This document shows, in pieces, positions 2,284-56,371 of a DNA stretch of 64,000 nt. The translations under genes were made by a program, and so were the position numbers. The stretch is from positions 124,001-188,000 of IMG/VR virus record IMGVR_UViG_3300032288_004964. One strand, written 5' to 3'. Positions within the stretch are counted from its first letter, which is position 1. Each line of letters begins with the position of its first letter. Below the pieces are notes generated by a model. The model had not been told where the DNA came from. It saw only the letters and a list, made by a program, of their open reading frames with translations, and did no database searches.

Positions 2284-2318
2284 AATTAAATATATATATT
2301 AAAATCTATAACTATAAA

Positions 2319-2636
2319 ATGAAAATTAGAAAATTTAATGAAGATGAAGAAGTAAATATTTCATCTGAAAGAGTTGATGAAATACTAAAAGAATTAAAAC
2401 AATTCTCATCACAATTAGGTGAAAATTCAAAAATGATGGAATCTCTTATTAATGAGCTTTCTAATTATAAATCAGATACTACTAAAGGTAATGATCAAAT
2501 AGATGATTCTATTGCATCATCACAATTTGTTAAATCAAATATTGATGATGCTATTGATAAAGTAGATAATGTGATAAATAACCTTATGGATTATAATGAT
2601 AAAGGTAGAAAATATTTATACACAGAAAATAAGTAA
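2319..2636 (+). CDS. Coiled-coil hypothetical protein with CTS-like N-terminus
   Basis: Starts MKIRKFNE; heptad pattern. Confidence 0.7.
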   Translation: MKIRKFNEDEEVNISSERVDEILKELKQFSSQLGENSKMMESLINELSNYKSDTTKGNDQIDDSIASSQFVKSNIDDAIDKVDNVINNLMDYNDKGRKYLYTENK

Positions 2637-2641
2637 TTAAT

Positions 2642-3451
2642 ATGAGATTAAAAGAATCATTAAAAGATTTAATAGTAAATTCCGTTTTATATACAATTAC
2701 TTTAATTAGAAGCCTTTTTGGTAAAATGGAAAAGAGTAACTCTAATATTACTTCTAAAATGGAGTTAATATTTGAGGATAATTTTCAATCATTTAATAAA
2801 GATGTTTGGAGAATTGGTCAACCTTGGGGTAAATTTCATCCAGGTTCTCCTTATCAATATTATGGAGATGAATCTGTTTTTATACAAAATGACTGTTTGG
2901 TATTAAATCAGATATATTCACCTAAACAATTAACTACTTGGGAAGATCCTAAAGTATATGATATACCTTACTCTGTTGGATTGATAACATCATATGAAAG
3001 TTATGGATATGGATTTTATGAATTTGAAGTAGAACTACCTTATGGTTCTGGATTATGGCCAGCAGTTTGGTTAAGTTGTGTTGATTCATGGCCTCCTGAA
3101 ATAGATATTATAGAAGCTTACTCTGATAATAAAGCTAATTATAAGAATAACTTACAATCAAATTTTCATTTCAATATGGAAGACAAAAAGGAGTCTTCTG
3201 GTGCTAGAAATCATCCAGTTAATGTTCCATATGATAAATTGAAATTGGGTTGCTGGTGGACTAAGGATTTCATTAAAATCTACTATAATGGACATCTAGT
3301 TAGACAAATTACATCTGATTATATTTTAAAATGGTTTAGAGATAAGAAAATGTTAATTATATTAAACAATGCTATTAGACCAGAATATACTAAGGATATA
3401 GAATCTCAAATTTCAGAATTTAGGATTTATAGTGTAAAAGTATGGAAGTAA
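2642..3451 (+). CDS. Glycoside hydrolase family 16 (laminarinase/beta-glucanase-like)
   Basis: GLWPAVW and WPPEIDIIE (ExDxxE catalytic motif); FEDNF and YGFYE segments. Confidence 0.85.
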   Translation: MRLKESLKDLIVNSVLYTITLIRSLFGKMEKSNSNITSKMELIFEDNFQSFNKDVWRIGQPWGKFHPGSPYQYYGDESVFIQNDCLVLNQIYSPKQLTTWEDPKVYDIPYSVGLITSYESYGYGFYEFEVELPYGSGLWPAVWLSCVDSWPPEIDIIEAYSDNKANYKNNLQSNFHFNMEDKKESSGARNHPVNVPYDKLKLGCWWTKDFIKIYYNGHLVRQITSDYILKWFRDKKMLIILNNAIRPEYTKDIESQISEFRIYSVKVWK

Positions 3452-3714
3452 TCATTGGAAGAAAATCAGATAGTTTGATTGAACAAGGTTATGTTTATGC
3501 TCCTTATATTCCAATTCAAACATCATCTGTTGTAAATGGATATGATTCTAAAAATACAAATAGAAAAAGAAAGATTAATAAGATATTTGGCTTAGGTTTA
3601 AATATTAAAGATGAATTCTTACCAAGTAAATCAATTACAAGTAGATACTCAACAAAGAATATAAATAGTAAATATTACGGAACTATAGAAATTAAAAACA
3701 CCACTCAAATTTGA
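3442..3714 (+). CDS. Small protein resembling the C-terminal segment of T4-like major capsid protein gp23, with an insertion
   Basis: GRK...EQGYVYAPYIP...F.P...ITSRY...YYG matches the gp23 C-terminal pattern GYKG..E.DAG.YYAPY...F.P....TRY (recalled from memory). Confidence 0.65.
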   Translation: MEVIIGRKSDSLIEQGYVYAPYIPIQTSSVVNGYDSKNTNRKRKINKIFGLGLNIKDEFLPSKSITSRYSTKNINSKYYGTIEIKNTTQI

Positions 3715-3725
3715 ATGGTGTTTTT
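3694..3725. terminator. Bidirectional intrinsic terminator
   Basis: AAAAACACCA-CTCAAATTTGAA-TGGTGTTTTT between convergent genes. Confidence 0.75.
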
Positions 3726-3744
3726 AATTTATTTCATATTTTAA

Positions 3745-4083
3745 TTATCTAATATATCCTGTTTTTTCTTCACCAGTTTTAAAGTTATAACAAGTTATTG
3801 AATCATGACCTGGTACAACAATAACATCACCAAATACAAATGGATTCATTATATCATATTCAAAAATAGCAACTTCAATTTTACCGTCTTTTACAATAAG
3901 TACAAACTCTCTACCTTCTTCATCAAATCCTTCTTTTAATTCAGAACCATCTGGTAATTTACTCAAATTTCTTCCAATTTCTATTTCACCTTCTATTTCA
4001 TCTGCTGTTAATGATCCTACTAATTTGAATCCTAAATCATCACCAGATTCCATGTCTTCGTTAAATTTTCTTAAGTGTTTCAT
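3745..4083 (-). CDS. Hypothetical protein with CTS-like N-terminus
   Basis: Starts MKHLRKFNED. Confidence 0.7.
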   Translation of the reverse strand: MKHLRKFNEDMESGDDLGFKLVGSLTADEIEGEIEIGRNLSKLPDGSELKEGFDEEGREFVLIVKDGKIEVAIFEYDIMNPFVFGDVIVVPGHDSITCYNFKTGEEKTGYIR

Positions 4084-4113
4084 ATTATTTTATTTTTTTT
4101 AAGTATTGAATCT

Positions 4114-5518: not shown

Positions 5519-5562
5519 ATTGTTTATTATTTTTAATAGAGTATATATTATTTATTTAAAAT

Positions 5563-6106: not shown

Positions 6107-6165
6107 AATTTGAAAATGTGAAAATTAAATTTAATATATACTATGTAAAAAATATAAGATTATAT

Positions 6166-7952: not shown

Positions 7953-9920
7953 ATGAAACTACATAAGTATAATCAATTTTTAGGTGAAAAGCCATTAAAT
8001 GAAAATCTTGATAAGGCTAAAAAGTTCTTAAAAGATAGATTTATTATATCTACAGCTGTTAAGGATTTAGATTTATTAAAAGGTGAGCTAGCTGCTCAAA
8101 TGGAACATGGTGAAAAAAGAACTTTAAGTTTAAAAGATTTTACACCAGAACAACAAGATGAACTTAGAAAAAAAATCAGAGAGATTAAACTTACTGATGA
8201 ACAGATAAGAAATATTGAAAGAGAACCTGATTTTGTTAAATTAAGAGAATTATTAAAAGATAATTTAGGTTATTTATATAACTTCACTTATATGTATTTT
8301 GTAGAAATGGTTTCTTTTGATGAGATTAAATCTATGTATGATAGAGTTCTTAGTTATGGTCAATTACTAGACAAACTTCCTAAGAAATTTGATGCTAACT
8401 TTATTGATCCAAATGTTCCAAACAATGCTGAAAAGTTAGTTGATGGTTTAGATACATTAGAAGATTATAAAAAGATTAAAAAAGTAGTTGATAAATTAAC
8501 TCCTGAACTTAAAAGAGATTATACAGCAGCTCCTGAAATGATTAAAGATGAATTTGCTCAAGTAGCAAGAGCATTTAATGATTTAGGTAAGAAAAGTGAT
8601 GGTACTATTGATGAGGTTGAAAGAGAAAAGTTATGGAAAACTTTCTTTGGTGAAGTTAGAATTATTGATTCTGATCAAGTAATTCACGGTAAAGCTTATA
8701 AGAAAGGTGATAAAAGGTATTTTGGTCCACTTTTTAGATATAAAAATATTAGAGAGTTTATTAAAGCCGCTCAAAATCACTTAAAAGCATCTGATAATAA
8801 AGATACTATCGCTTTCTATGATAAGATTAATAAATGTAATGAAAAGTTTGGATATTTAGGCGCTGATGTTATGTTTGATGAAGAAGGTATATTAATAATT
8901 GAAGTTAAATCATTCCCAGCTAATGTATTCTTAAACGGTCACACAAGACACTGTATTAAAGATTACATGAGTCAGTGGGATAATTATGTAGGTAATCATA
9001 ATAATAAACAATATTATATTTATAACTTTAATATTCCTCAATATAATAACTTATCTGTTATTGGTGTTACAATTGAACCAGCTCAAAGAATTAGAGCGGC
9101 TCACGCTAAAGATGATAGTAATGTAGCAGGAACAATTAAAAACATTCTAAAGAATTGGGAAAGTGAGTATAAAATAGATACTGATTTATTTACTAATGCT
9201 CTTAAATCAATGACTAAAGAAGAAATTGATAGAAGAGAAAGAGCTAAAGTAGCTGAAAGAGAAATTGTTAGAAAAGGATTAACAATTGAACAAATACTTA
9301 AATATGTAAAAGAAGACGGTGCTAATATTAATAAAGATAATGCTAAGGCACTTGAAAATGCAGTAGAAGAAGGTAATATAGAAAAAGTAAAGGTTTGCTT
9401 AGAATTGGGAGCTTCTCCTAACTTAAAACCTAAAGGACCAGATGCTATTATATCAAAAGCTAAAGGATTAGATATGATTAAATTATTAGTATCTCATGGT
9501 GCTGAATTAACTGGAGATGTATTCAATCAGGTTCTTAGTGATATGGAAGCTCTTGAATATTGCCTTAAAGCTGGATTGGATCCTAACTTTAGTGCATCAC
9601 TTCCTTTTAGAAAAGTTTGTAAAGGTTCTTGGAAAAACAAAGATGAAATTGGAGAAGGTTATTTTGAACCATTTAAAATGTTACTTAAATTTGGTGCTAA
9701 ATTAACTGATGATAGAGGTAGAAATATGATTATTAAATGGGCAGCTGAATATGGTAGGATAGATTTTATTAAGTATTTAGTAGAAAATGGTTTAGATAAA
9801 TCATTTACTGACGGTGACTGGAAAGAAGCTATTACTTGGATTAATCACGCAAGAAAAATGCCAGAGGCTACTAAGAATGAGGTTGTTAAATATTTACAAT
9901 CTAATATAAAAGAAAAATAA
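7953..9920 (+). CDS. Protein with C-terminal ankyrin repeats and CTS-like N-terminus
   Basis: GANIN..ALENAVEEGNIEKVKVCLELGASPN and WAAEYGRIDFIKYLVENG are ankyrin-like. Confidence 0.75.
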   Translation: MKLHKYNQFLGEKPLNENLDKAKKFLKDRFIISTAVKDLDLLKGELAAQMEHGEKRTLSLKDFTPEQQDELRKKIREIKLTDEQIRNIEREPDFVKLRELLKDNLGYLYNFTYMYFVEMVSFDEIKSMYDRVLSYGQLLDKLPKKFDANFIDPNVPNNAEKLVDGLDTLEDYKKIKKVVDKLTPELKRDYTAAPEMIKDEFAQVARAFNDLGKKSDGTIDEVEREKLWKTFFGEVRIIDSDQVIHGKAYKKGDKRYFGPLFRYKNIREFIKAAQNHLKASDNKDTIAFYDKINKCNEKFGYLGADVMFDEEGILIIEVKSFPANVFLNGHTRHCIKDYMSQWDNYVGNHNNKQYYIYNFNIPQYNNLSVIGVTIEPAQRIRAAHAKDDSNVAGTIKNILKNWESEYKIDTDLFTNALKSMTKEEIDRRERAKVAEREIVRKGLTIEQILKYVKEDGANINKDNAKALENAVEEGNIEKVKVCLELGASPNLKPKGPDAIISKAKGLDMIKLLVSHGAELTGDVFNQVLSDMEALEYCLKAGLDPNFSASLPFRKVCKGSWKNKDEIGEGYFEPFKMLLKFGAKLTDDRGRNMIIKWAAEYGRIDFIKYLVENGLDKSFTDGDWKEAITWINHARKMPEATKNEVVKYLQSNIKEK

Positions 9921-9966: not shown

Positions 9967-9974
9967 TATATTTG
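9967..9974 (+). promoter_or_regulatory. Bacteroidota-type -7 box TAnnTTTG
   Basis: TATATTTG 4 nt upstream of ATG 9979; same octamer found at five other gene starts. Confidence 0.55.
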
Positions 9975-11264: not shown

Positions 11265-11281
11265 AAGGTATATATTAAAAC

Positions 11282-11995: not shown

Positions 11996-12074
11996 AGTCT
12001 ATATAGTAAGATTCTACCCTTCTATCAACAAAGCGTTATTTTTATGATATGTGATTTTTAATATATAGATTATT

Positions 12075-13227: not shown

Positions 13228-13264
13228 AATGTATATATTATTTTGATATTCCATATATTTATAG

Positions 13265-13272
13265 TATATTTG
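13265..13272 (+). promoter_or_regulatory. Bacteroidota-type promoter (-7 TATATTTG; TTTG 19 nt upstream)
   Basis: TTTG at 13242-13245 plus TATATTTG at 13265-13272. Confidence 0.65.
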
Positions 13273-15927: not shown

Positions 15928-15967
15928 TTTTAATTAATTATTTTTATACTTTATATATAAATTTTTC

Positions 15968-16023: not shown

Positions 16024-16043
16024 ATATTTTTAATATATACTAT

Positions 16044-18766: not shown

Positions 18767-18776
18767 AGTTTATATA

Positions 18777-20063: not shown

Positions 20064-20080
20064 TAAACTATATATTATTT

Positions 20081-20953: not shown

Positions 20954-21061
20954 TAATATGTTTATTTTTATGTTTTATATATCTAAATTATCATAGTTTA
21001 ATCAAAAAAAATTCCATGAGTAAAAGTTAAAAGGGAAAGTCCTTTTTATAATATATAACTT

Positions 21062-21898: not shown

Positions 21899-21906
21899 TA
21901 TATTTG
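21899..21906 (+). promoter_or_regulatory. Bacteroidota-type -7 box
   Basis: TATATTTG 4 nt before ATG 21911. Confidence 0.6.
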
Positions 21907-26225: not shown

Positions 26226-26255
26226 ATAGTATCTTTGAATAATAATATATAATGT

Positions 26256-30104: not shown

Positions 30105-30115
30105 TATATTTGTGT

Positions 30116-30778: not shown

Positions 30779-30809
30779 ATTTTAATATATAAGAAAAACT
30801 TATATTTTA

Positions 30810-32729: not shown

Positions 32730-32740
32730 AAACTATATAT

Positions 32741-34457: not shown

Positions 34458-34515
34458 ATATCTATATATTATTTATTTATTGTTACTAATAATTTTGTTT
34501 TTAGTGAAAATTCCG

Positions 34516-35921: not shown

Positions 35922-35935
35922 AAACTATATATTAA

Positions 35936-37707: not shown

Positions 37708-37813
37708 TAGAAAGATTATTTTTTATTATATATTGGTGTTAATCAATTACCTTTTATATGTTGATAAGAAGTATAAAGTTTTAATATATAAGATAAAATT
37801 TGGCTTTTTATAG

Positions 37814-43183: not shown

Positions 43184-43211
43184 AATTAAATTAGAAATTA
43201 ATATATAGTTT

Positions 43212-43568
43212 ATGATTAAAAAGTATTTTGAATATATTAAGGAATCTCAAGATGACAATAAATATCAAGAATTAGAGGATAAAGTTATTTCTTTAATTCA
43301 AGATACTGTTGATACTGAAAAACAATATGATTCTGTTGATTCTTTTGTTGATGCCTTTATAAAAAAAGGTGATGTTGAGATAAGAGGTTTGATAAAACAA
43401 GATGATCTTTATCAGTTTTACTTAGATTGGAGAAATGATATAGATGAAATACTAAATAATATCAATTTCTTTGATGAGGTACCAAGTAAGATGAATTCTA
43501 TTGGACTTTATGACTATATCATAGCTGGTGTTAAAAGAGCTGTTAAAGAAGTAGTTAAAATGATTTAG
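43212..43568 (+). CDS. Hypothetical protein with CTS-like N-terminus
   Basis: MIKKYFEYIKES; AATATATA-GTTT-ATG. Confidence 0.7.
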   Translation: MIKKYFEYIKESQDDNKYQELEDKVISLIQDTVDTEKQYDSVDSFVDAFIKKGDVEIRGLIKQDDLYQFYLDWRNDIDEILNNINFFDEVPSKMNSIGLYDYIIAGVKRAVKEVVKMI

Positions 43569-44002
43569 AATATCATTTTAATATAACTCCAAGTATCAAG
43601 ATGTAAATGATAATGATTTATAACTAAATATAAATATATTAATAGTTTTGATAAGATAACTATAAATCCTAAAATTTTATCAATAAGTGTAAATTCTATC
43701 GGTCTTTTTACTAAGTTTATAATTAGAGTAATTATAAATAAAGAAAGAAATACATACCAACTATTTGTTAGTAACCCTAAAATGGACCAAGTGAATTCAA
43801 ACATCATAAGTGATGAAAATGAGTTATATAGAATAGACTCTTCTTTACTTCTAAAATCTCTTTCTTTAGGTGTTTTACCAGTTACTTTTTTGAATTTTGT
43901 ATACCACTCTTTAATATTTGTTATTTGTTTAAATTTAACTAATATGGTAAGTAATGATACTACTATGATTAGTCCAAATGTGTAATATATGTGTCCTAGC
44001 AT
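43565..44002 (-). CDS. Membrane protein
   Basis: About four hydrophobic segments. Confidence 0.7.
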   Translation of the reverse strand: MLGHIYYTFGLIIVVSLLTILVKFKQITNIKEWYTKFKKVTGKTPKERDFRSKEESILYNSFSSLMMFEFTWSILGLLTNSWYVFLSLFIITLIINLVKRPIEFTLIDKILGFIVILSKLLIYLYLVINHYHLHLDTWSYIKMIF

Positions 44003-44111
44003 CTTAAATGATTTTTTATTTTATATATAAATAAGAAGAATAGTTTGCTATTTTTAATACAAACAGAAGTGTGAAATAAATATATATAGATAATAAAATT
44101 AATTTAATTAG

Positions 44112-46871
44112 ATGGCAAGTACACCACTTTATAAGAAACTTAAAGATAATGGCACAACCTTTTATTGTTTTCCAGGTGCTGCAGAAGATATATCAGCAGC
44201 TTATCAGAATCAAAATTATAAAATGTATTTTTCTAAATATGCTTTATTGAATTTTCCAAAACAAAATTTACAAAACATAGGTGGTACACAAGCTACTCCA
44301 ATTTATTGGGATTTTGATGTATTTAAAAAATCATCAAATGCTTCAATTTCAACAGACTACTCTGAGCAATTAGTTGAGTCATTAAGAAACTATGTGGCTA
44401 ACCAAGAGGTGGTTGTAAAAGAATCTAGATTGAATAATAGTCAGTACTATTATGATAATAATGAACCATATACTACCACCGAGAAAATATTTTGGAAGTG
44501 GTGTAAGAAATTAAATGTTATTCAGTTTGAACCTGCTTCTCCAAGTGATGAATACTTTTCAAATTTAGATGAGTTTTCAAGTGCTGATCCAAATGATGAT
44601 ACTTACTTTCCAGAGTATATTTGGAAAGAAAGAGAGATTGTAGATTGGCCTGTTTATACATTTTATGAAAGTTCAAATCAACCTGGGTATTTAGAAGCCG
44701 AATTTTATGCAACAACAAATTTTAGAGTAGGTGATATTGTTAAATTTACTGGTATAAGTTCTTTAACTAATACGGAAATACCTGGTATAGAATCAGATAC
44801 TTTACAAACAACTGTTACTGAATTAATAGCTGCTGGTGCTACACAAGGTCAAAAAGTTATCTTTGATATACCAACAAATGGCTTAGTTTCTGGAACTTAT
44901 TTTGAAAATGGTGATGGCTCTATTGGCTTAGTTTATAACAGATTAGTTCAGTATATTGGTGAGGTAAATGGTATTAATAATGTTCAAGAGGCTAACAGAT
45001 CATATACAGAAGTTTATGCTTTAGTTCCAGATCATACTGGTCAAACTCCTGATATTTTATTTAGATTACATAGTGATAATAATTATAAACCCAATTTAAC
45101 GTTCCCAATTATACCTAGTCAATATCAGCCTGAGATTATAGGAGCTGAATTATTCACATCTCCGATTGTTAACACTCCTCAAAATTACCCTGGTTCATAT
45201 TTTGGTCAGTTTGATACTGAAGATTACACATATGAAGTTTCTAATGGTGACTCTATTAGAAGAAGTGGAGATTATTATGGTGTTAGTGGTGATATAAATA
45301 ATCCTGTTATTGATGGATCAACAATAGATGGTGCTATTTTAGACTTTAATACTACACATTATGTTAAAATGAATATTAATAGTGGAACTATTCAAACATT
45401 TGACCAGTTCAATGCTATGGAGGTTAATAATTTACCACCTAATGATTTTGAATTTAATGCTATTCTATGGTATTATACTATTGAAGATATTAATGGAAAT
45501 ATTTCAACCAATTTATATGGTATATCATTTTTAGATAATCCAATGAATAATCCTGTTACAGAGGAAATTGGCATAAAACTACCAATTTATAAAAAGTTAG
45601 TTTCTAATGGAGTCCATGATGGTACTTCTTATGCTTTTAGTTTAAATTTAAGTTTTAATATAATTAATGAGAATCCACAAGATTCCTATAATCCACAATC
45701 AATTAATACTTTATTTGGTATGGATTTATTTAATACAGCTATGACTAGGTTGGCTTCAATTAATGATACATTCTTAACAATGGTTGCTGAAAATATTGAT
45801 ATTAAGACAGAGATAGATAATATCAGACAATTACTTTATACACAAACTGAACTTGATACAATAAACGCCAAGATTAAAAATCTTGAAAATTTACTAATAC
45901 TTTACAAGACAAATCAATTACAAACTTCGGATACAATTAAAGTTGTTCAACAAGAAACTCCAAGTTTTACAGTTCTAACTTTAGAAAACATTGATACTGG
46001 ATATAAAACAATTACATCAGTTAAAACTACTGACTTATATACAACAACTGGAGTAATTCCTATTAATGTATCAGTTCCTGAGAATAAGGATTTTTTTGTT
46101 AAAATAATTAACAATGATGAGGTTAATTTAACTCTACCCAATGAGGATAGATTAGTTGTTGTTTTAGATAAAGATTTGTCTTATAGACAATCGTGTCAGT
46201 TTGTAATTGATTCAACATCCACATCAACACAAAATAAAAAGCTTGATATTTATATTAAATATGTCTATAATCCTAACTCCAATATTTCAGCAGGTGAAAC
46301 AATTTATATAACTAACACTAATGTATTACCGGTTGAGACACCATTGATAACAAATATTGATTTACCGGTTGCTTTTAATAGTGTTACTCAACAAGCTAAC
46401 TTCTCATATGTAAGTGATAAGTTCAACTTTAATGTTGATTTAAATAATCCTATTATATTAAATGCTGGTAGTATTCTACAAGTTCCTCTTGATACAAATT
46501 ATGTGTTATTAAATAATACATTAAAGTCTGGAGATACACTTATGATGAATGACTTCTTAGTTGGTACTACTTCCGTGTTTAATTTCTCTGGTCAGTATGA
46601 TATTTCAAGTGTTGGTACTACAAGTTCCTATATTTATTTAGATATATCTAGTAATAATGAACTGGTTGCTTATGGAGCAAGTGCTACGCCAAAATATATT
46701 CATGATCCTAACGGATTTATGACACTTGGTACTTATTCAACAGAATTGTCAAATATTCCCTACTTTAGTTTAAATAAAGGATATAGATTTACAATTACTA
46801 GAATATCAGATTCAGATATTTCTTCAATAACTGATAGATATTTAATTCAAACTGAACATCTTTTAAAATAA
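44112..46871 (+). CDS. Putative virion structural (tail/baseplate) protein
   Basis: 919 aa; N/T/S-rich; short coiled coil; in the structural cluster behind a late box. Confidence 0.55.
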   Translation: MASTPLYKKLKDNGTTFYCFPGAAEDISAAYQNQNYKMYFSKYALLNFPKQNLQNIGGTQATPIYWDFDVFKKSSNASISTDYSEQLVESLRNYVANQEVVVKESRLNNSQYYYDNNEPYTTTEKIFWKWCKKLNVIQFEPASPSDEYFSNLDEFSSADPNDDTYFPEYIWKEREIVDWPVYTFYESSNQPGYLEAEFYATTNFRVGDIVKFTGISSLTNTEIPGIESDTLQTTVTELIAAGATQGQKVIFDIPTNGLVSGTYFENGDGSIGLVYNRLVQYIGEVNGINNVQEANRSYTEVYALVPDHTGQTPDILFRLHSDNNYKPNLTFPIIPSQYQPEIIGAELFTSPIVNTPQNYPGSYFGQFDTEDYTYEVSNGDSIRRSGDYYGVSGDINNPVIDGSTIDGAILDFNTTHYVKMNINSGTIQTFDQFNAMEVNNLPPNDFEFNAILWYYTIEDINGNISTNLYGISFLDNPMNNPVTEEIGIKLPIYKKLVSNGVHDGTSYAFSLNLSFNIINENPQDSYNPQSINTLFGMDLFNTAMTRLASINDTFLTMVAENIDIKTEIDNIRQLLYTQTELDTINAKIKNLENLLILYKTNQLQTSDTIKVVQQETPSFTVLTLENIDTGYKTITSVKTTDLYTTTGVIPINVSVPENKDFFVKIINNDEVNLTLPNEDRLVVVLDKDLSYRQSCQFVIDSTSTSTQNKKLDIYIKYVYNPNSNISAGETIYITNTNVLPVETPLITNIDLPVAFNSVTQQANFSYVSDKFNFNVDLNNPIILNAGSILQVPLDTNYVLLNNTLKSGDTLMMNDFLVGTTSVFNFSGQYDISSVGTTSSYIYLDISSNNELVAYGASATPKYIHDPNGFMTLGTYSTELSNIPYFSLNKGYRFTITRISDSDISSITDRYLIQTEHLLK

Positions 46872-46914
46872 AGATTTTTAATTTTAATATATACATTAAA
46901 ATTATTAATAACTT

Positions 46915-48076: not shown

Positions 48077-50365
48077 ATGAGTTATAGTTACGATAGATTC
48101 TTAAGACCGATAACATCAACCGATAGAAATATACAAATCTTAGATAATACTGGTATTATTAAATATACTATTAATCCATTTTCTGTCGTTGAGTCGATGG
48201 TTTCTAATAATTTATTAAAAATTAATATAAAGGGTGCTAGAATTATAACTATAAACTTTTCTACATCCAATGAAGCTAAGTTAGCTTTACCTAGATTACA
48301 ACAGCAAATTGATACATTAACTCAGAAAGTACCACTTGTAATTGATAAAGATATAAAAAATTATATAGATAGTGTAGTTGGAAATACTGGCACAAGTGGT
48401 TCATCTGGATCATCTGGTACATCTGGTGTTGATGGTACTTTTTATGGGTCAAGTGGATCTTCTGGTGTAAATGGCACATCTGGTGTTTCTGGTGCTACTG
48501 GTGCTACTGGATCTAATGGATCATCTGGTACATCTGGTACATCTGGTATATCTGGTGGATCTTATGATTATAGTAATGGAATAACTTTAACTGGATTAAC
48601 TGTTAGTTTAGGTGGTACACTTAGTCAAACCGTGATATTAAATGGTGATCTAAATGATTTACTTTTCACAGGATTTGATAACTTGGTTTTTACTAGTTCT
48701 GTATTTGATGTTGTTTCTGATCTTATTAGTTTAGATTCAAATGATTCTACTCAAATATTATCTATTAATGATATTACAATAAATGCTGGTGGTCAAATAT
48801 CTTTAAGTGGTGATTCTGGATTGGTTTCCATTGGAAATACACAAGGTTTAGTTTATCAATCTGATTATAAATTAGGATTTGTAACACACTCATTAGTTGA
48901 TAAGGGTTATGTGGATTTCGCAATTGAAGGTGTGTCTAAATACAGAGGAACTTCTAGTACTCAAATTGTTGTACCTGAAGCTGGATATGTTGTAACATTT
49001 ACTACACAAACTAATTTAGCTTATACACCTGGTGAAACTATTGTAATGTATGATACCTATCCAAACCTATATATGATTGATGATTATGTAGAAGATGGTG
49101 TTAGTGGTAATATAATAGGTACAGTTGATTCATATAATATACTTACTGGTAGTATATCAGTTGTTGTTGATTATTCAGAATCTATTGGTAATACATATAG
49201 TTATTGGTATATAAATTTAAGTGGTAAAACTGGTGTTGGTTTAATTGGAGCTACTGGAGCTACAGGTTTCAGTGGTACTAATGGTACTTCTGGTACAAGT
49301 GGGTCATCTGGTACAAGTGGATCATCTGGTACAAGTGGATCATCTGGGACATCAGGTTCTAGTGGAACATATGGTTCTAGTGGATCATCTGGGACATCAG
49401 GTTCTTCTGGTCCTTCTGGTTTATCTGGTACTTCTGGTACATCCGGTACTTCTCAAAATGTTTCTGCTAGTTATATGAGAGGTTCTCGTTCTACTCAACA
49501 AACCACTAATTTAACTATTAATAGTTTAGTTGCCTTTACCCAAACTGATAATTCAACTGGATCTGATATATCATTGAACACATCAACTGGTCAAATTACA
49601 CTTGCTGCAAATAGAACTTATAGATTATTAGCTCAAGTACCAACTTGGGAAGGATTGAGTGGTGCTAGACCATCTTTTAGATGGTATGATGAAACGTCAG
49701 CCTCTTATATAGGTAGTTTATCAGCCGCTTATAATCCAGGTGATGCTGGTGCTTATGGTGCATTTGGTGGCACATCCGATGTTGTTATCACAACAACACA
49801 AACAACAGTTGTTTCTTTTAGAATAGTTAATGGTACTAACTTATCTGGACTAGGTGGTAACGGTGATTTTAGTACAGGTGGTTCTTATCCTTGGTTTGAT
49901 ATTGAAGTTATATCTGGATATGTACCAATAGTTAATGATACAAGTTTATCTTTATCAGAAACACTTACAGTTACTGGTACTGCTTCTTTTAATGGATTAA
50001 CTGTTTTACAAGAAGTATCTGAAGTTATAAATTCAACACCTGGGGCTACTGCATCAACTGTTATATATGACTTCTCAACAGGTTCTAATTGGTATCATTC
50101 ATCTGCTACTACTAACTATACTGCTAATTTTACAAATATTCCAACAGATAATAATAGAGCAACAACTGTTACTATAGTTATAAATCAAGGTTCAACTGCT
50201 TATATACCAACTGCTGTTCAAATAGGTGGTACTCCATCAACTGTTAAATGGGCTGGTGGTACTGCTTCTGGGAATGCTAATCAAGTCGATATAGTTGGAT
50301 TTACATTTATTAGAAGTGGTAATGCCTGGGCTCAAGTCTTAGGACAAATAAACACTTTTGATTAA
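48077..50365 (+). CDS. Collagen-like (Gly-Thr/Ser-Ser) fibre protein
   Basis: Two G-X-Y tracts (GTS/GSS/GAT); C-terminal VKWAGG..GNANQVDIVG..QVLGQ domain. Confidence 0.75.
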   Translation: MSYSYDRFLRPITSTDRNIQILDNTGIIKYTINPFSVVESMVSNNLLKINIKGARIITINFSTSNEAKLALPRLQQQIDTLTQKVPLVIDKDIKNYIDSVVGNTGTSGSSGSSGTSGVDGTFYGSSGSSGVNGTSGVSGATGATGSNGSSGTSGTSGISGGSYDYSNGITLTGLTVSLGGTLSQTVILNGDLNDLLFTGFDNLVFTSSVFDVVSDLISLDSNDSTQILSINDITINAGGQISLSGDSGLVSIGNTQGLVYQSDYKLGFVTHSLVDKGYVDFAIEGVSKYRGTSSTQIVVPEAGYVVTFTTQTNLAYTPGETIVMYDTYPNLYMIDDYVEDGVSGNIIGTVDSYNILTGSISVVVDYSESIGNTYSYWYINLSGKTGVGLIGATGATGFSGTNGTSGTSGSSGTSGSSGTSGSSGTSGSSGTYGSSGSSGTSGSSGPSGLSGTSGTSGTSQNVSASYMRGSRSTQQTTNLTINSLVAFTQTDNSTGSDISLNTSTGQITLAANRTYRLLAQVPTWEGLSGARPSFRWYDETSASYIGSLSAAYNPGDAGAYGAFGGTSDVVITTTQTTVVSFRIVNGTNLSGLGGNGDFSTGGSYPWFDIEVISGYVPIVNDTSLSLSETLTVTGTASFNGLTVLQEVSEVINSTPGATASTVIYDFSTGSNWYHSSATTNYTANFTNIPTDNNRATTVTIVINQGSTAYIPTAVQIGGTPSTVKWAGGTASGNANQVDIVGFTFIRSGNAWAQVLGQINTFD

Positions 50366-50366
50366 T

Positions 50367-52847
50367 ATGTTTAGTAGATTATCATCATTTTCAGGACCAT
50401 TATCGCCTGTTTTTAGACTACCAGGTGGATTTACACTTAATGGTTTAATTTTAAGATATGTTATAGGAGATACTAACTCTTATTCAGGAACTAGTAGTGT
50501 CATCGACTTACAAGGTAATTCTAATGGAACTTTATACAATGGACAAGATATTGTTGGTATTGGTCCAACATATTCACTTAATGGTTACTTAAATTTTGAT
50601 GGAGTCAATGATTATATTATGACAAATACATCACTTAATTCTAAATTGTCACCAGCAAATACATCAACAATAATATCACATTTTATTTGGATATATCCTC
50701 AGGATAATGGTGTTATTGTCACTGAACAAGGTGATACATCTTTAAATGGTGTTGGTTGGCATGATTCACAAATTGAAATAGTTTCAGGAACATTAAAGTT
50801 TGGTGTTTGGAATGGTATAATTATATCTTCGTCTATTTCAATATCTTTATATAATTGGTACTATGTTGGCTTAACTTATGATGGAATAACACTAAGAGGT
50901 TATGTAAATGGTCAACTTGCCGGATCTATTACTGGTAGTAGATCAACTCCTCAATCAGCTGGTAATGGACTACATTATGCTATTGGTGCTAATGATGGTA
51001 CAAGTTTAGGTGACGGTAGTTATGCTAAAATGAAACTTGGTGATTTTCATGTTTATAATACAGCTCTTAGTCAACAACAAATTCTTAATAATTACAATGC
51101 TACTAAAAATGATTATATTTATACAGGTAGTATGTCTATTTGGATTGATGCGAATGACCCAGCGAGTTTTTCAGGTGGTTCAATTAGTGATTTGAGTGGT
51201 AATGGTTATACACACTCTTTAGTTGCTACTTCATCTACAATATTTGGTTTCAAGTCTTTTAATTGCACAGCGGTGTCAAATAATTATATAAGAGTAAACG
51301 GAACAGGTCCATTATTACCTACATCAGGTTATACATATGTTGCTTGGGCAAGAATTTCAGCAGATTCTTCTACATATAGAACATTATATAGAAGTTCTCC
51401 AAATGATCATGCTCTTTTAGTTCAAATAAATACTGATAATTTAGGATTTTGGGATAATGATTCAAATTCTTTTAAAGATTCTGGTTATGATGTAAGCTCA
51501 ATTGAAGAAAAATGGGTTCAATATTCGGTAGTTGGTGATTCATCTAGTAGTATATTCTATATAAATGATGTAGAAGTTGGTGCAACCAATTCCGGTGCTA
51601 GTGGTAATAGACATGATTACTTTGGTGGTATTGATGGACAACCTTTTGGTTATGTTGGTAATATGATGTTATATAATAAAAAATTATCTCAATCTGAAAT
51701 TAAACAAAATTATGATGCTCTTAAAAATGTTTATAAGAATGGTGATTTTGTAATTAGTAATATAGGTATATCTTTACTACCGTCTAATGCTGGTAGTACT
51801 ATTTGGTCCGATTCAAAAGGCAATTTTAATGCCACAATGTCAGGATCGCCATCATATAATAATACTGGTTATACATTTAATGGAACTTCTCAGTATGGTA
51901 GAATTGTTAGTTCTACAGGTATTACCGATTTTACAAATACAAATAATTATACTATCGAGGTATGGACTAAACCATCTTCAGGACAACCAAATTCAACAAC
52001 AACCATTTTGGAAAAATGGAATTTAGGAAATTCATCAAATTATCCTTATACATTAAGATTTACTGAAGGTTCAAGTACTGCTTATTTTGCTTGTTATGAT
52101 GGAACTAATTTCCCTCAAGGTACTTTAACCGGAGTTTCAGTAGGTAACTGGTATCAATTAGTTGGTGTTTTTAATTTCACCACTGATGTTTTAACAGTTT
52201 ATAAAAATGGTATTTCTGCTGGAACTGCAAGTTTAGTTGGGGTTGGTGGTTTAAGTAATACAAGTCCTGTGGGAATTGCTCATAGAGTAAGTATTGACGG
52301 ATCATCTGCTGAGTTTATGTTTAAGGGTTCAATTGGTATTATAAGAATTTATAGTTCTGCTCTCAGCGCCTCTGATGTATCTAAAAACTTTGAGGCAAAT
52401 AGAAATATTTATGGAATTTCAGACTCGATCACTACAACTACTACGACTGTTGCTCCGACAACTACAACTACTACGACTGTTTTTCAAGGTGGTCCAATAA
52501 GTGAAATCTCCGTTAATCTTGGAATTAATGGTGTTGTTTATACACTAGCTGATGGACATGATTTTGAAAGTGGTCCTTTCGAACAAATGTTTTCAACAAC
52601 TACACTAAATATGTTTACTGCGTTAACCAATTATTTAGGTGATACACCTAATGCTGAATTTAATTTAGATATTACTCAAGTATTTGATAATCAAGGAAAT
52701 CTAGATGGTTATTCAATTAATTTATATCTAAGTACCCCAGGGAATGGATACAATGTTGGTGATATTATAACCATACCTGGAAGTGAAATTGGTGGAACCG
52801 ATAACACTGATGATGACTTAATAATAACTGTTACTTCAATATCATAG
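50367..52847 (+). CDS. Multi-LamG (concanavalin A-like) adhesin/fibre tip protein
   Basis: Three repeats of FDG..DY/FNG..Y...W..V...Y.NG...YN.ALS..I..NY; Thr-rich linker; start at MFSRLS (or 50358). Confidence 0.8.
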   Translation: MFSRLSSFSGPLSPVFRLPGGFTLNGLILRYVIGDTNSYSGTSSVIDLQGNSNGTLYNGQDIVGIGPTYSLNGYLNFDGVNDYIMTNTSLNSKLSPANTSTIISHFIWIYPQDNGVIVTEQGDTSLNGVGWHDSQIEIVSGTLKFGVWNGIIISSSISISLYNWYYVGLTYDGITLRGYVNGQLAGSITGSRSTPQSAGNGLHYAIGANDGTSLGDGSYAKMKLGDFHVYNTALSQQQILNNYNATKNDYIYTGSMSIWIDANDPASFSGGSISDLSGNGYTHSLVATSSTIFGFKSFNCTAVSNNYIRVNGTGPLLPTSGYTYVAWARISADSSTYRTLYRSSPNDHALLVQINTDNLGFWDNDSNSFKDSGYDVSSIEEKWVQYSVVGDSSSSIFYINDVEVGATNSGASGNRHDYFGGIDGQPFGYVGNMMLYNKKLSQSEIKQNYDALKNVYKNGDFVISNIGISLLPSNAGSTIWSDSKGNFNATMSGSPSYNNTGYTFNGTSQYGRIVSSTGITDFTNTNNYTIEVWTKPSSGQPNSTTTILEKWNLGNSSNYPYTLRFTEGSSTAYFACYDGTNFPQGTLTGVSVGNWYQLVGVFNFTTDVLTVYKNGISAGTASLVGVGGLSNTSPVGIAHRVSIDGSSAEFMFKGSIGIIRIYSSALSASDVSKNFEANRNIYGISDSITTTTTTVAPTTTTTTTVFQGGPISEISVNLGINGVVYTLADGHDFESGPFEQMFSTTTLNMFTALTNYLGDTPNAEFNLDITQVFDNQGNLDGYSINLYLSTPGNGYNVGDIITIPGSEIGGTDNTDDDLIITVTSIS

Positions 52848-52986
52848 GAACTGATGAATCTGTTAAATAAAAAATTTATTTTTTAATTGATACTTATAAT
52901 ATAATGATATAGCAATTGTCAAGTAGCAAAAAATAGAAAAAATTAATATTTGAAATATAATATATAATAAAAAATAACAATAAAAT

Positions 52987-54195: not shown

Positions 54196-54998
54196 GAAAA
54201 ATTCATTATATAGGTGGTCTACCGAGAAGTGGGTCAACTTTATTAACAAACATTCTTTTACAGAATCCAAAATTTGCTACAACAGCAACATCTTCTCTTT
54301 TAGACTTTCTCTTACAAGTAAGAGATAATTGGAATAAATTAGAAGGACATAAAGTTTATGAAGAAGGCCAGGATAAATGGGCAGTTATCAGAGCAATTAT
54401 GTATAACTATCACAAAACTGATAAAGAAGTTATCTTCGATAAAAACAGAGGTTGGTCTACACATATTGAATTTATGGAAAAAGCAACTGGTGAAGGAGTT
54501 AAAATAATTGCTTGTGTTAGAAATCTTGAAGATATCTGTTCTTCTTTTGAAAAACTATTTAGAAAGAATAGAGCTGATGGTGAAATACACGGTGAATTTT
54601 CTAATCCTAAAATGAAAAATAGAGAAGGTAGAGTTGGTGTTTGGACATCAGATGAAGGAGTTATAGGAAGACCTTATATTTCTTTATTAGATACAATCCA
54701 AAGAGGTTTAGGTGATAGAATATTATTCTTCCCATATGAAGAATGGTCATCTAATCCTGACTTCTGGTTTAAGAAATTATATGAGTTTGTAGGTGAAGAA
54801 TATTACCAACATGATTTTAATAATATCGAACAAGTTATTAGAGAAAATGATGCTGGTTATGGTTGGGGATCTGATTTGCATGAAATTAAAAATGGTAGAT
54901 TATTACCAGCTAAATCAGATGCTATTGAAATATTAGGTAGAGATTGGTTTGTTAAATTACATGACACAGAATTCTGGAAGACTAAGAAAAAGAAATAA
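54192..54998 (+). CDS. PAPS-dependent sulfotransferase
   Basis: 5'-PSB loop GLPRSGSTLL; 3'-PB IIACVRN..DI.SS; YEE...P. Confidence 0.85.
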   Translation: MRKIHYIGGLPRSGSTLLTNILLQNPKFATTATSSLLDFLLQVRDNWNKLEGHKVYEEGQDKWAVIRAIMYNYHKTDKEVIFDKNRGWSTHIEFMEKATGEGVKIIACVRNLEDICSSFEKLFRKNRADGEIHGEFSNPKMKNREGRVGVWTSDEGVIGRPYISLLDTIQRGLGDRILFFPYEEWSSNPDFWFKKLYEFVGEEYYQHDFNNIEQVIRENDAGYGWGSDLHEIKNGRLLPAKSDAIEILGRDWFVKLHDTEFWKTKKKK

Positions 54999-54999
54999 T

Positions 55000-55032
55000 A
55001 AAAAAACCTCTCAAATTTGAGAGGTTTTTTTT
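55000..55032. terminator. Bidirectional intrinsic terminator
   Basis: AAAAAACCTCTCAAATTTGAGAGGTTTTTT palindrome. Confidence 0.85.
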
Positions 55033-55237
55033 ATTCATCCATTTTAATAAATTTATACCAAAATCTTTCATGTATAAAGTAGATAATAGGTTTTAAGACT
55101 AACTCACTAACACCTAATAAAGAAGCAATTTTAAGAGGTGCCCCTAACAATGTAGCTGTTATAACTGTTGTTAAAGTTCCTAAAATTCTATATGTTATAG
55201 TTTTATAAAGGTGTCTCTTTATAGCTTTATCCTTCAT
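55031..55237 (-). CDS. DUF2061-like small membrane protein
   Basis: RHLYKTITYRILGT...K.IIYFIHER.W. Confidence 0.8.
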   Translation of the reverse strand: MKDKAIKRHLYKTITYRILGTLTTVITATLLGAPLKIASLLGVSELVLKPIIYFIHERFWYKFIKMDE

Positions 55238-55685
55238 TTACCATTAGATTTTTTATTACATCTTCTTGTATAGACTCGTGAACCATTGTTCTCCAAGAAT
55301 CATCACCATTCTTAATAGAATCTCTGATTTTTGTAGCTGAGATAAATGCGATGTCACCTGGAGGTGTAAACTCATTTATTTCATAACCAACACCTCTTCC
55401 ATAATTAACAGATTCAATATCAGGGATAATCATTACTTTAACATCATCATTTTTAGCAGCATGATACTTCTCAATCATTTCTACTGTTTGTTCAGTTGTA
55501 AAAGGATTCTTTTCATCTGGTTCGATGTCTCTAACCATAATTAAAGCTGGTATACCTGCATCTAATTTTTGTTGAATTAATTCAATATGTCCATAATGAT
55601 AAGGTTGGTATCTACCTACAAAGATAGCATACTTTTTATCTGGATTCTTAGTGGGTTCTCCACCGTGATTTACTTTTGACCACAT
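55227..55685 (-). CDS. HxGH nucleotidyltransferase (cytidylyltransferase-like)
   Basis: FVGRYQPYHYGH; NPF; YGRGVGY; ISATKIR. Confidence 0.8.
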   Translation of the reverse strand: MWSKVNHGGEPTKNPDKKYAIFVGRYQPYHYGHIELIQQKLDAGIPALIMVRDIEPDEKNPFTTEQTVEMIEKYHAAKNDDVKVMIIPDIESVNYGRGVGYEINEFTPPGDIAFISATKIRDSIKNGDDSWRTMVHESIQEDVIKNLMVNEG

Positions 55686-55686
55686 A

Positions 55687-56268
55687 TTATTTGTTATTTT
55701 TTAATATTAACTCAGTAAGAAAGTTTACATTTTTTTCTAAATCTTCTTCTGTGTTATTTTTTAGTACTGTTGCATTTTGAGGAGTTTCAAAAGGAGATGA
55801 GATTCCTGTAAATTCTTTAATTTCACCAGCTCTTGCTTTTTTGTAAAGACCTTTAGGGTCTCTAGTTTCACAAGTAGAAAGTTCAGCATCAATGAAAATT
55901 TCCATAAATCCTTCACCAATAATTTCTTTAGCTTGGTTTCTATTCTTTTCAAATGGAGAGATAAAAGAACAGATTACAATTAGACCAGCATCATTCATAA
56001 GTTTACAAACTTCTGAAACCCTTCTAATGTTTTCTACTCTTGCTTCTTCTGAGAATCCTAAATCTTTGTTAAGACCCATTCTAGTGTTATCACCATCTAA
56101 AATATAGGTGTGATATCCCAAACTGATTAGTTTTTCTTCAACTAAATTAGCAATAGTTGATTTTCCTGAACCGGATAATCCAGACATCCAAATGGTACAA
56201 GCCTTTTGATTTTTGATAGATTCACGGTTTTCTTTTGTTGTTTTAAAATTGTGCGTAGTTATATTCAT
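55687..56268 (-). CDS. cysC: Adenylyl-sulfate (APS) kinase
   Basis: GLSGSGKST; LDGD..R; R.ENIRR; FISP; RDPKGLY.KAR.GEI..FTGI. Confidence 0.95.
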   Translation of the reverse strand: MNITTHNFKTTKENRESIKNQKACTIWMSGLSGSGKSTIANLVEEKLISLGYHTYILDGDNTRMGLNKDLGFSEEARVENIRRVSEVCKLMNDAGLIVICSFISPFEKNRNQAKEIIGEGFMEIFIDAELSTCETRDPKGLYKKARAGEIKEFTGISSPFETPQNATVLKNNTEEDLEKNVNFLTELILKNNK

Positions 56269-56371
56269 ATGAATTATATTTTACAGAGTCTATTTGTTTT
56301 AAAAAATCACATAAAAGAATTTTTTTACATTATAATTTTAATATATACTCTATAAAAAATATTTTTTAACT

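What the first reader, a model, noticed from the sequence alone, without database searches (positions are those of the whole stretch)
2284..56371. AATATATA late-promoter-like box, usually exactly 4 nt before ATG (leaderless mRNAs?)
AATATATA-N4-ATG occurs at starts 11264(-), 13227(-), 16044, 18766(-), 21062, 26256, 35921(-) and 43212, with near-matches at 32729(-) and 11995(-). Spacing is N5 at 20063(-) and 34457(-). Longer leaders occur at 5518(-), 6166, 30810, 37814, 44112, 46915, 52987 and 56372. It is analogous to the T4 late box TATAAATA read by a gp55-type sigma. The fixed 4-nt spacing puts the expected +1 on or next to the ATG, and no SD is present. All three endonuclease genes have acquired the box.
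Basis: partly seen in the sequence, partly recalled or inferred. Interest (0 to 1): 0.6.

Follow-up and report, generated by a model that had tools for sequence, protein, structure and literature searches.

The report
Phage promoter box abutting start codons
A 385-kb phage that probably infects Bacteroidota carries a conserved TAATATATA box in front of about 40% of its genes, half the time only 4-5 bases before the ATG, so many of its messages probably have no leader, which is rare in such hosts.

Summary
The window lies in a 385-kb, 28.7% GC phage contig.

Genome-wide, a TATATA core (extended consensus tTAATATATA, no -35 partner, no Shine-Dalgarno) precedes 164 of 439 genes. The spacing to the ATG is bimodal:
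- 4-7 nt in 79 genes
- about 14-30 nt in 85 genes
- almost nothing between

The core is about 4-fold enriched over the AT-rich intergenic background. The pattern recurs in 60 related loci and in five 344-483-kb relatives. Orthologous genes keep the same promoter class.

A second box, the Bacteroidota sigma-A -7 element TAnnTTTG, shows the same 4-5 nt spacing. That is the published box-to-start-site distance in Flavobacterium, so the A of ATG would be +1.

The phage has no RNA polymerase beta subunit. It encodes a 121-aa gp55-family late sigma and an ECF-type sigma. Head genes carry the box, but so do uvsX and a helicase.

Best reading: a gp55-type single-element phage promoter, roughly half of whose transcription units are leaderless. 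No RNA data could be obtained, so start sites, timing and the sigma assignment remain inferred.

The parts
2291..2296 (-). TATATA box, spacer 7, before start 2283(-); shares a palindromic TATATATA with the next entry
2293..2298 (+). TATATA box, spacer 20 (leadered), before start 2319(+)
   Evidence: orthologues leadered 10/10
5542..5547 (-). TATATA box, spacer 23, before start 5518(-)
   Evidence: orthologues leadered 13/14
6135..6140 (.). One palindromic TATATA serving divergent starts 6106(-) (spacer 28) and 6166(+) (spacer 25)
9967..9974 (+). Host-type sigma-A -7 box TATATTTG, spacer 4, before start 9979(+)
11269..11274 (-). TATATA box, spacer 4, before start 11264(-) (DUF7487 protein)
12000..12005 (-). 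TATATA box (cTATATA variant), spacer 4, before start 11995(-), RuvC-like resolvase
   Evidence: box at spacer 4-7 in 19 of 27 distinct orthologous upstream regions
12062..12067 (+). TATATA box, spacer 7, before start 12075(+)
13232..13237 (-). TATATA box, spacer 4, before ATG 13227(-), an internal ATG of the ORF that opens at 13254 and the likely true start
13265..13272 (+). Host-type TATATTTG box, spacer 16 (leadered), before start 13289(+)
   Evidence: orthologues 18 leadered and 4 abutting the ATG
15952..15957 (-). TATATA box, spacer 24, before uvsX/recA-like start 15927(-)
   Evidence: box kept in most orthologues while the flanks diverge; 33/39
16034..16039 (+). TATATA box, spacer 4, before HNH endonuclease start 16044(+)
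   Evidence: 17 orthologues with spacer 4-6
18771..18776 (-). TATATA box, spacer 4, before start 18766(-); the TAA in front of the box is the stop codon of the upstream gene
20069..20074 (-). TATATA box, spacer 5, before start 20063(-)
20976..20981 (-). TATATA box, spacer 22, before start 20953(-)
   Evidence: orthologues leadered 8/8
21052..21057 (+). TATATA box, spacer 4, before LAGLIDADG-like endonuclease start 21062(+)
21899..21906 (+). Host-type TATATTTG box, spacer 4, before phosphoesterase start 21911(+)
   Evidence: orthologues 17 abutting the ATG and 8 leadered
26246..26251 (+). TATATA box, spacer 4, before start 26256(+); a TATCTTTG box lies 18 nt upstream of the ATG
30105..30112 (+). 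Host-type TATATTTG box, spacer 3, before ligase-like start 30116(+)
30786..30791 (+). TATATA box, spacer 18, before start 30810(+), directly after a terminator hairpin at 30753-30773
32734..32739 (-). TATATA box, spacer 4, before start 32729(-), directly after a hairpin and T-run
34463..34468 (-). TATATA box, spacer 5, before start 34457(-)
35926..35931 (.). Single palindromic TATATA in a 14-bp divergent intergenic region, 4 nt from both ATG 35921(-) and ATG 35936(+)
37727..37732 (-). TATATA box, spacer 19, before PhoH-like start 37707(-)
37785..37790 (+). TATATA box, spacer 23, before a small ORF (GTG at 37814) that heads the 1716-aa gene
43202..43207 (+). TATATA box, spacer 4, before start 43212(+)
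44022..44027 (-). TATATA box, spacer 19, before start 44002(-)
44083..44088 (+). TATATA box, spacer 23, before the 919-aa gene start 44112(+)
46888..46893 (+). TATATA box, spacer 21, before start 46915(+), head of the operon with the collagen-repeat and LamG proteins
52961..52966 (+). TATATA box, spacer 20, before start 52987(+)
56342..56347 (+). TATATA box, spacer 24, before the 1676-aa gene start 56372(+)

Best explanation
The box (consensus tTAATATATA; core TATATA at about -10..-5) is the main phage-specific promoter of a clade of 340-480-kb jumbo phages that most likely infect Bacteroidota. It is a single -10-region element with no -35 partner. It is most likely read by host core RNA polymerase carrying the phage's 121-aa gp55-family sigma.

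Transcription is inferred to start 5 (sometimes 6) nt after the box. In about half of the boxed genes that nucleotide is the A of the ATG, so the mRNA has no 5' leader, or at most 1-3 nt. In the other half an A-rich, G-poor leader of about 15-20 nt follows.

A smaller set of genes uses the host sigma-A -7 box TAnnTTTG with the same two geometries. These are probably early genes.

Shown: the motif, its enrichment, the bimodal spacing, conservation across relatives and orthologues, the sigma genes, and the absence of an RNA polymerase beta-subunit match. Inferred: the start site, the sigma assignment and the timing.
For: 1. Enrichment and position. AATATATA-N4-ATG is 8 against 0.5 expected in the window. 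Intergenic TATATA is 226 against 58.5 +/- 7.7.

2. Bimodal spacing genome-wide. TATATA lies within 60 nt upstream of 181 of 439 genes, with spacers of 4-7 nt or about 14-30 nt and spacers 8-13 nearly empty. After start refinement, 79 genes have the box abutting the ATG and 85 have a leader.

3. Anatomy. Extended consensus T-A-A-TATATA, no conserved -35, no SD. The base after the box is rarely T (6 of 76), which gives the palindromic core a direction. Position -1 is T in 67% of the genes whose box abuts the ATG, against 47% of unboxed genes. In leadered genes the 5th nt after the box is A in 74%.

4. Same geometry for a known promoter element. TAnnTTTG peaks at N4-5 before ATGs, 11 + 8 in this genome and 40 + 25 in relatives. 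In Flavobacterium that element spans -12..-5 and bona fide promoters have 4 or 5 nt to the start site (PMC9723704; PMC6847099).

5. No room for a leader. One palindromic box sits in a 14-bp divergent intergenic region, 4 nt from both ATGs (35921-/35936+). Boxes also directly follow terminator hairpins.

6. Conservation. The same spacing profile appears in 60 related loci, N4 = 170, N5 = 69, N6 = 86, including a 41% GC locus. Five near-complete relatives have 21-40 AATATATA-N4-ATG each against 1-3 in the reversed control and 1-3 at N10. Promoter class is kept gene by gene across orthologues while the flanks and the 4-nt spacer vary.

7. Factor. No RNA polymerase beta match. A gp55-family protein is present (phrog_234, E = 4e-7; Pfam Sigma70_r2 weak; BLASTP to T4 gp55 E = 0.003 over the NF-E-K-N-AY-T core). 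It is 80-98% identical in four relatives.

8. Targets. The major head protein, prohead protease, portal and large terminase are boxed. Genes behind the host-type box are enzymes: NAD-dependent ligase, NUDIX-kinase, peptidases, phosphoesterase, ligase.

9. mRNA start. The first 40 nt of the coding sequence are less structured in genes whose box abuts the ATG (-1.29 against -2.20 kcal/mol, p = 6e-4).
Against: No transcript 5' ends: no RNA run was listed for this phage.

The box also precedes uvsX, a helicase, a resolvase and PhoH, so it is not a clean 'late' class.

The gp55 assignment rests on a moderate profile hit over about 55 residues. The fold model was poor (pLDDT 63), and the PDB sequence and fold searches were uninformative.

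No T4-type gp45 clamp was found.

The T4 consensus TATAAATA shows no signal here.

Seventeen genes whose box abuts the ATG lie 20 nt or less behind a same-strand gene, so they could also be read through from upstream.

In the window alone the host-type box at N4 is not above chance (2 against 1.6).

Leaderless mRNAs are rare in the presumed host phylum, 3.7-5.5%, so efficient leaderless translation there is unproven.
Confidence: 0.65

Rival explanations
1. The box is a promoter with the same leaderless geometry, but it is read by something other than the gp55-like protein. Candidates are the phage's ECF-type sigma (202 aa, regions 2 and 4) or host sigma-A redirected by a phage appropriator protein.
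For: An ECF-type sigma is clearly encoded (Sigma70_r2 E = 4e-15, r4_2 E = 4e-11). The gp55 assignment is only moderately supported. One relative with many boxes gave no phrog_234 hit (G005).
Against: ECF sigmas use a bipartite -35/-10 promoter, and no -35 conservation accompanies the box. The box lacks T-7 and G-5, which are nearly invariant in host sigma-A promoters. G005 is only 91% complete.
Confidence: 0.15
2. The box is an RNA-level signal, not a promoter. It would be either a translation-initiation enhancer for SD-blind Bacteroidota ribosomes (possibly with the phage's own bS21) or a cleavage site for an endoribonuclease that trims polycistronic RNA to leaderless messages.
For: Seventeen genes whose box abuts the ATG lie 20 nt or less downstream of a same-strand gene, in three cases with the upstream stop codon forming the TAA of the box. 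The phage encodes bS21. There is no SD.
Against: A ribosome-binding signal would not also sit 20-25 nt upstream in an equal number of genes with nothing between. One palindromic box serves divergent genes. Boxes follow terminators. The known DNA-level sigma-A element shows the identical spacing.
Confidence: 0.1
3. The pattern is a by-product of AT-rich, compact intergenic DNA, and the box has no function.
For: AATATATA as a bare word is not enriched in the whole window (26 against 23). The genome is 28.7% GC.
Against: There is about 4-fold enrichment over a Markov model of the intergenic DNA itself, sharp positional peaks, and conservation across orthologues and in a 41% GC relative. Reversed and N10 controls are near zero.
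Confidence: 0.02

Closest known systems
T4-type late promoters read by gp55 (Straboviridae; T4 consensus TATAAATA, starting at -13)
   Same: A single A/T box in the -10 region with no -35 element, used in both orientations (PMC2988020). It precedes head genes. A small sigma of the gp55 family lacking region 4 is encoded. The major head protein is gp23-like.
   Different: The consensus is TAATATATA, not TATAAATA, which shows no positional signal here. The box probably lies one position closer to the start site. No gp45-type clamp was detected. The sigma is 121 aa against 185 aa in T4. The box precedes about 40% of genes, including recombination and replication genes. Half of the boxes abut the ATG.
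Leaderless genes with a -10 box at a fixed distance from the ATG (Actinobacteria, Deinococcus-Thermus, archaea; GeneMarkS-2 leaderless classes)
   Same: A promoter element a few nt upstream of the ATG, no SD, and a bimodal split into leaderless and leadered genes (PMC3160421 and PMC6028130, listed).
   Different: Here it is a phage of a phylum where only 3.7-5.5% of host mRNAs are leaderless. The element is phage-specific rather than the host -10 box. Start sites have not been mapped.
Bacteroidota sigma-A promoters (-7 TAnnTTTG, -33 TTTG)
   Same: The minor promoter class in this phage matches the element and its 4-5 nt distance to the start site.
   Different: The TATATA box lacks the near-invariant T-7 and G-5 and has no upstream TTTG. 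In the phage the host-type box also often abuts the ATG, which is uncommon in host genes.
bS21-encoding freshwater Bacteroidetes phages (Chen et al. 2022, PMC9723584)
   Same: Large phages with predicted Bacteroidetes hosts and a phage bS21 expressed with late genes. This genome also encodes bS21, behind a TATATA box.
   Different: That paper's main text mentions no promoter, leaderless, motif, sigma or UTR terms. Here bS21 is not next to the head-gene block. Relatedness to those clades was not tested.

Membership tests
T4-type late transcription (gp55 late promoter) | Single -10-region A/T box, no -35 element | tested here: met
   An alignment of 181 boxed upstream regions shows information only at T-A-A-TATATA, with nothing conserved around -35.
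T4-type late transcription (gp55 late promoter) | Consensus TATAAATA | tested here: not met
   TATAAATA (177 copies) shows no spacing peak before ORF starts in this genome or in relatives. The box here is TAATATATA.
T4-type late transcription (gp55 late promoter) | Phage encodes a gp55-family sigma (region-2-like only, no region 4) | tested here: met
   phrog_234 E = 4e-7 (T4 gp55 scores 3e-69 in the same family). The protein is 121 aa with no region 4. BLASTP to T4 gp55 gives E = 0.003. The support is moderate: fold and PDB searches were uninformative.
T4-type late transcription (gp55 late promoter) | gp45 sliding clamp and gp33 co-activator | tested here: not met
   phrog_223 (the family T4 gp45 hits at 7e-85) has no match in the genome at E <= 1. 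gp33 was not searched. A divergent or host clamp is not excluded.
T4-type late transcription (gp55 late promoter) | Drives late (virion) genes after replication starts | tested here: inconclusive
   The major head protein, protease, portal and terminase are boxed, but so are uvsX, a helicase, a resolvase and PhoH. Timing cannot be tested without RNA.
Leaderless mRNA genes | Promoter element at the fixed distance that places +1 on the A of AUG; no SD | tested here: met
   Spacer N4 in 43 genes and N5 in 22. This equals the 4-5 nt distance from box to start site in Flavobacterium. G is 3-9% upstream of starts.
Leaderless mRNA genes | Mapped primary 5' end at the start codon | not testable with these tools
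   No RNA run was listed for this sequence, so no reads could be laid.
Bacteroidota sigma-A promoter | TAHHTTTG at -12..-5 with T-7 and G-5 near-invariant | tested here: not met
   This applies to the TATATA box, which has A at -7 and A at -5. The feature is met by the separate minor class of 30 genes.
ECF-sigma promoter | Bipartite -35/-10 elements | tested here: not met
   No -35 conservation accompanies the box. The ECF-type sigma gene itself is present.

The most novel reading that the evidence does not exclude
This phage clade may run its own translation-initiation regime in a host whose ribosomes ignore SD sequences. Phage sigma-driven transcripts begin at, or about 15-20 A-rich nt before, the AUG. 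Ribosomes carrying the phage-encoded bS21, which is itself transcribed behind a TATATA box, would preferentially initiate on these 5'-terminal or short-leader AUGs. That would give the physical basis for the selective translation of late phage mRNAs proposed for bS21 phages.
Probability: 0.15. Interest if true: 0.85.

Novelty: new variant of a known kind. Interest (0 to 1): 0.55.

Why it matters
These uncultured 340-480-kb phages, and their 630-735-kb relatives, are among the largest known, and nothing is known about how they are transcribed. A simple, conserved promoter grammar has several uses:
- It gives correct start-codon calls and operon maps.
- It suggests a provisional early (host-type box) versus phage-sigma gene classification.
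- It supports Bacteroidota as host, together with the absence of SD sequences, the cultured relatives' hosts and the phage bS21 gene.

If about half of the transcription units really are leaderless in a phylum where leaderless mRNAs are 3.7-5.5% of the total, it raises a testable question: how do SD-blind ribosomes, possibly modified by phage bS21, select phage messages?

The box-N4-ATG cassette would also be a compact expression signal that depends on the phage sigma.

Tried and rejected
- RNA evidence: the look-up of sequencing runs listed no run, so read laying could not be used.
- Motif discovery by expectation-maximisation collapsed into a generic A/T-rich profile. I kept the strict core instead.
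- A GGGG element 11-13 nt upstream of the box looked like a -30 partner at uvsX/HNH. It occurs at only 5 of 181 boxes, so it is local.
- I first read the gp55-like gene as frameshifted. Relatives show a plain 121-codon gene whose ATG is ATC here, so the frameshift idea is withdrawn.
- Structural confirmation of the gp55-like protein failed. The model had pLDDT 63. Foldseek gave no hit at E <= 0.001. VIA-align gave only generic helical bundles with Z <= 8. The PDB profile search gave no hit. hhalign to T4 gp55 gave probability 1.4%.
- Cultured relatives as test systems: Tenacibaculum PTm1, Chryseobacterium MA9V-2 and Flavobacterium MaF61 show no enrichment of TATATA-N4-ATG (12 against 6, 2 against 1, and 4 against 1 in the reversed control). 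Lak-B5 is weakly enriched (87 against 50).
- Sigma-70-type -35/-10 sites are fewer than in shuffles (121 against 154).
- No third promoter motif was visible by eye in the 56 unboxed genes with gaps of 45 nt or more.
- An alternative genetic code is not needed.

Full report
**What the window is.** The window is bases 124001-188000 of a single 385,333-bp virus contig. The contig is 28.7% GC, densely coding under the standard code, and carries 37 tRNA genes. Its proteins are those of a phage:
- a UvsX/RecA-like recombinase, an HNH endonuclease, and collagen-repeat and LamG proteins
- a major head protein, prohead protease, portal and large terminase

The head protein is closest (52-72% aa identity) to the 630-735-kb uncultured huge phages. 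Next, at about 25%, come jumbo phages of Tenacibaculum, Chryseobacterium and Flavobacterium, and at about 30% over part of its length the Prevotella Lak phages. Several hundred cyanophage records also match at under 60% identity. This fits the jumbo-phage group that Iyer et al. define by phage sigma factors and a gp23-type capsid (PMC7824862).

**The observation.** The core TATATA-N4-ATG occurs 15 times against 4.2 expected. All other listed cases are present. The bare 8-mer is not enriched in the window as a whole. The signal lies in where it sits. Intergenic TATATA is 226 against 58.5 +/- 7.7 under a Markov model of the intergenic DNA itself, and AATATATA is 61 against 8.7.

**Genome-wide anatomy.** Without using any gene calls, the distance from AATATATA to an ATG that opens an ORF of at least 60 aa is bimodal. 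N4 = 36, N5 = 17 and N6-7 = 9. N8-17 is almost empty, and a second mode follows at N18-27. With my own gene calls (439 genes), a TATATA lies within 60 nt upstream of 181 genes. After start refinement, which changed only 4 starts:
- 79 genes have the box at 4-7 nt
- 85 genes have it at 12-32 nt
- 30 genes carry a different box (see below)
- 245 genes have none and are mostly operon-internal

The extended consensus is T-A-A-TATATA. Nothing is conserved near -35, and G is only 3-9% where an SD would lie. The base after the box is rarely T (6 of 76), which gives the palindromic core a direction. In leadered genes the 5th base after the box is A in 74% of cases. The leader is A-rich (56% A, 4% G) with an inferred length mode of 15-20 nt.

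**A second promoter class with the same geometry.** The hexamer TATTTG also piles up 4 nt before starts. The full element is TAT(A/C)TTTG, often with TTTG or TTG upstream. This is the Bacteroidota sigma-A -7/-33 promoter. It peaks at N4-5 before ATGs, 11 + 8 here and 40 + 25 in relatives. It has a second, leadered group.

Published start-site maps place TAnnTTTG at -12..-5 in Flavobacterium psychrophilum (PMC9723704). In F. johnsoniae, bona fide promoters have 4 or 5 nt between the element and the start site (PMC6847099). So a box 4-5 nt before the ATG puts +1 on the A of ATG. The phage-specific TATATA box obeys the same rule, which is the strongest indirect argument for leaderless transcripts.

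In the window alone, however, this second class is not above chance (2 against 1.6). Its support comes from the genome-wide profile and from orthologues.

**Structural arguments.**
- At 35921(-)/35936(+), the whole divergent intergenic region is 14 bp. It is a single palindromic TATATA, 4 nt from each ATG.
- Ten further divergent pairs lie 24-45 bp apart with a TATATA box between them.
- Boxes follow terminator hairpins directly, as at 30753-30773 followed by the box at 30786 and at 32729(-).
- The first 40 nt of the coding sequence are less structured in genes whose box abuts the ATG (mean -1.29 against -2.20 kcal/mol, p = 6e-4).

**Conservation.**
- Sixty IMG/VR loci encode UvsX relatives. 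Fifty-eight are 72-97% identical and two are distant (48% and 37%). Their contigs reach 483 kb.
- Pooled, the 60 loci show the same profile: N4 = 170, N5 = 69, N6 = 86, and a second mode at N19-26. One of them is a 41% GC locus.
- Five near-complete relatives carry 21-40 AATATATA-N4-ATG each, against 1-3 for the reversed control and 1-3 at N10.
- Upstream of uvsX, the box is kept about 22-26 nt before the ATG while the flanks diverge.
- Promoter class is conserved gene by gene. The RuvC-like gene has the box abutting the ATG in 19 of 27 distinct upstream regions, and the HNH gene in 17. The uvsX gene is leadered in 33 of 39. The phosphoesterase has the host-type box abutting the ATG in 17 and leadered in 8. 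Unboxed genes stay unboxed.
- Where orthologues of the phosphoesterase switch between the two states, none of the boxed upstream regions printed shows a spacer of 7-15 nt.
- Cultured flavobacterial jumbo phages lack the signal, and the 635-kb relative and Lak-B5 show it only weakly.

**Who reads the box.** The genome has no match to the RNA polymerase beta-subunit domain. It encodes two sigma-like proteins.
- One is an ECF-type sigma with regions 2 and 4.
- The other matches PHROG 234, 'late sigma transcription factor', at E = 4e-7. T4 gp55 itself hits that family at 3e-69. It aligns to T4 gp55 over the conserved core.

The second protein is 121 aa, has no region 4, and is 80-98% identical in four relatives. 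A sigma without region 4 fits a promoter without a -35 element, so it is my preferred reader.

The assignment is moderate, not strong. The fold model was poor, and the structure and PDB searches said nothing. No T4-type clamp was found. The T4 consensus TATAAATA has no positional signal here.

**Timing.** The major head protein, protease, portal and terminase carry the TATATA box, with leaders. So do the large putative fibre genes in the window. Genes behind the host-type box are enzymes: NAD-dependent ligase, NUDIX-kinase, peptidases, phosphoesterase and a ligase. That fits 'host polymerase early, phage sigma later'. But uvsX, a helicase, a resolvase and PhoH are also boxed. The box is therefore better called the phage-sigma promoter than strictly 'late'.

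**Comparison and novelty.** The system works like T4 late transcription joined to the leaderless gene architecture known from Actinobacteria, Deinococcus-Thermus and archaea. It differs in four ways:
- the consensus sequence
- the apparent lack of a gp45-type clamp
- the share of genes covered
- the share of predicted leaderless units, 95 of 194 predicted transcription-unit heads, in a phylum where 3.7-5.5% of host mRNAs are leaderless

My literature searches found no description of this box or of leaderless organisation in these phages. Those searches cover open-access papers only.

The genome also encodes ribosomal protein bS21, in an operon behind a TATATA box. Chen et al. proposed that phage bS21 biases ribosomes towards late phage messages (PMC9723584). 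The unusual 5' ends inferred here could be what is being selected. That is speculation.

**Limits.**
- The gene calls are my own simple dicodon caller.
- Start sites, timing and sigma specificity are inferred.
- No RNA data could be reached.

Noticed in passing
L004:1402-1764 (-) = G000:C1:41344-41706, outside the window: In this genome the gp55-like sigma gene has ATC where three relatives have the ATG start codon, and a fourth relative has ATT. The reading frame is otherwise intact at 121 codons. A near-cognate start could keep the sigma level low or put it under control of the initiation machinery.
   Followed up: partly
G000:C1:195490-195681 (+), outside the window (L094): A phage-encoded ribosomal protein bS21 (Pfam PF01165, 41.5 bits, above the cut-off). 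It is the third gene of an operon headed by a leadered TATATA box at 194554.
   Followed up: partly
G000:C1:235740-236348 (+) (L001:1417-2025): An ECF-type sigma factor (regions 2 and 4_2) with neither box upstream. Its target promoters were not identified.
   Followed up: no
G000:C1:370132-370204: A tRNA with anticodon CUA, which ARAGORN calls 'Pyl' and which looks like an amber suppressor, among 37 tRNA genes. The genome nevertheless reads well in the standard code: 91% of it lies in ORFs of at least 100 aa.
   Followed up: no
window about 15965-16022: An inverted repeat, CCCCCTTTT ... AAAAGGGGG, lies between the divergent uvsX and HNH genes. Each G-run sits 11-13 nt upstream of that gene's TATATA box. 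It is conserved in most relatives but found at only 5 of 181 boxes genome-wide. It may be a gene-specific operator or a bidirectional hairpin.
   Followed up: partly
window 35922-35935: A 14-bp divergent intergenic region made of one palindromic box and two 4-nt spacers. It is the most compact bidirectional promoter candidate in the genome.
   Followed up: yes
L002:116-1207 (+) = G000:C1:40085-41176: A glutamine synthetase-like gene (Gln-synt_C, E = 2e-17) lies next to the gp55-like gene.
   Followed up: no
window 7953-9920, 32795-33796, 36898-37707, 48077-52847: An ankyrin-repeat protein, a protein with a SHOCT domain, a PhoH-like ATPase, and adjacent collagen-repeat and LamG/concanavalin-like proteins (probable fibres).
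   Followed up: no
loci L049-L051, L019, L022, L062, L064: This set of relatives has no TATATA upstream of uvsX, and several of them have fewer TATATA overall. L051's genome still encodes a gp55-like protein (80% identical) and has 21 AATATATA-N4-ATG. It could be used to test co-variation of sigma and box.
   Followed up: partly
window 26001-46000: Sigma-70-type -35/-10 promoter-like sites are fewer than in shuffles (121 against 154 +/- 11), while terminator-like hairpins are enriched (14 against 4.3).
   Followed up: no
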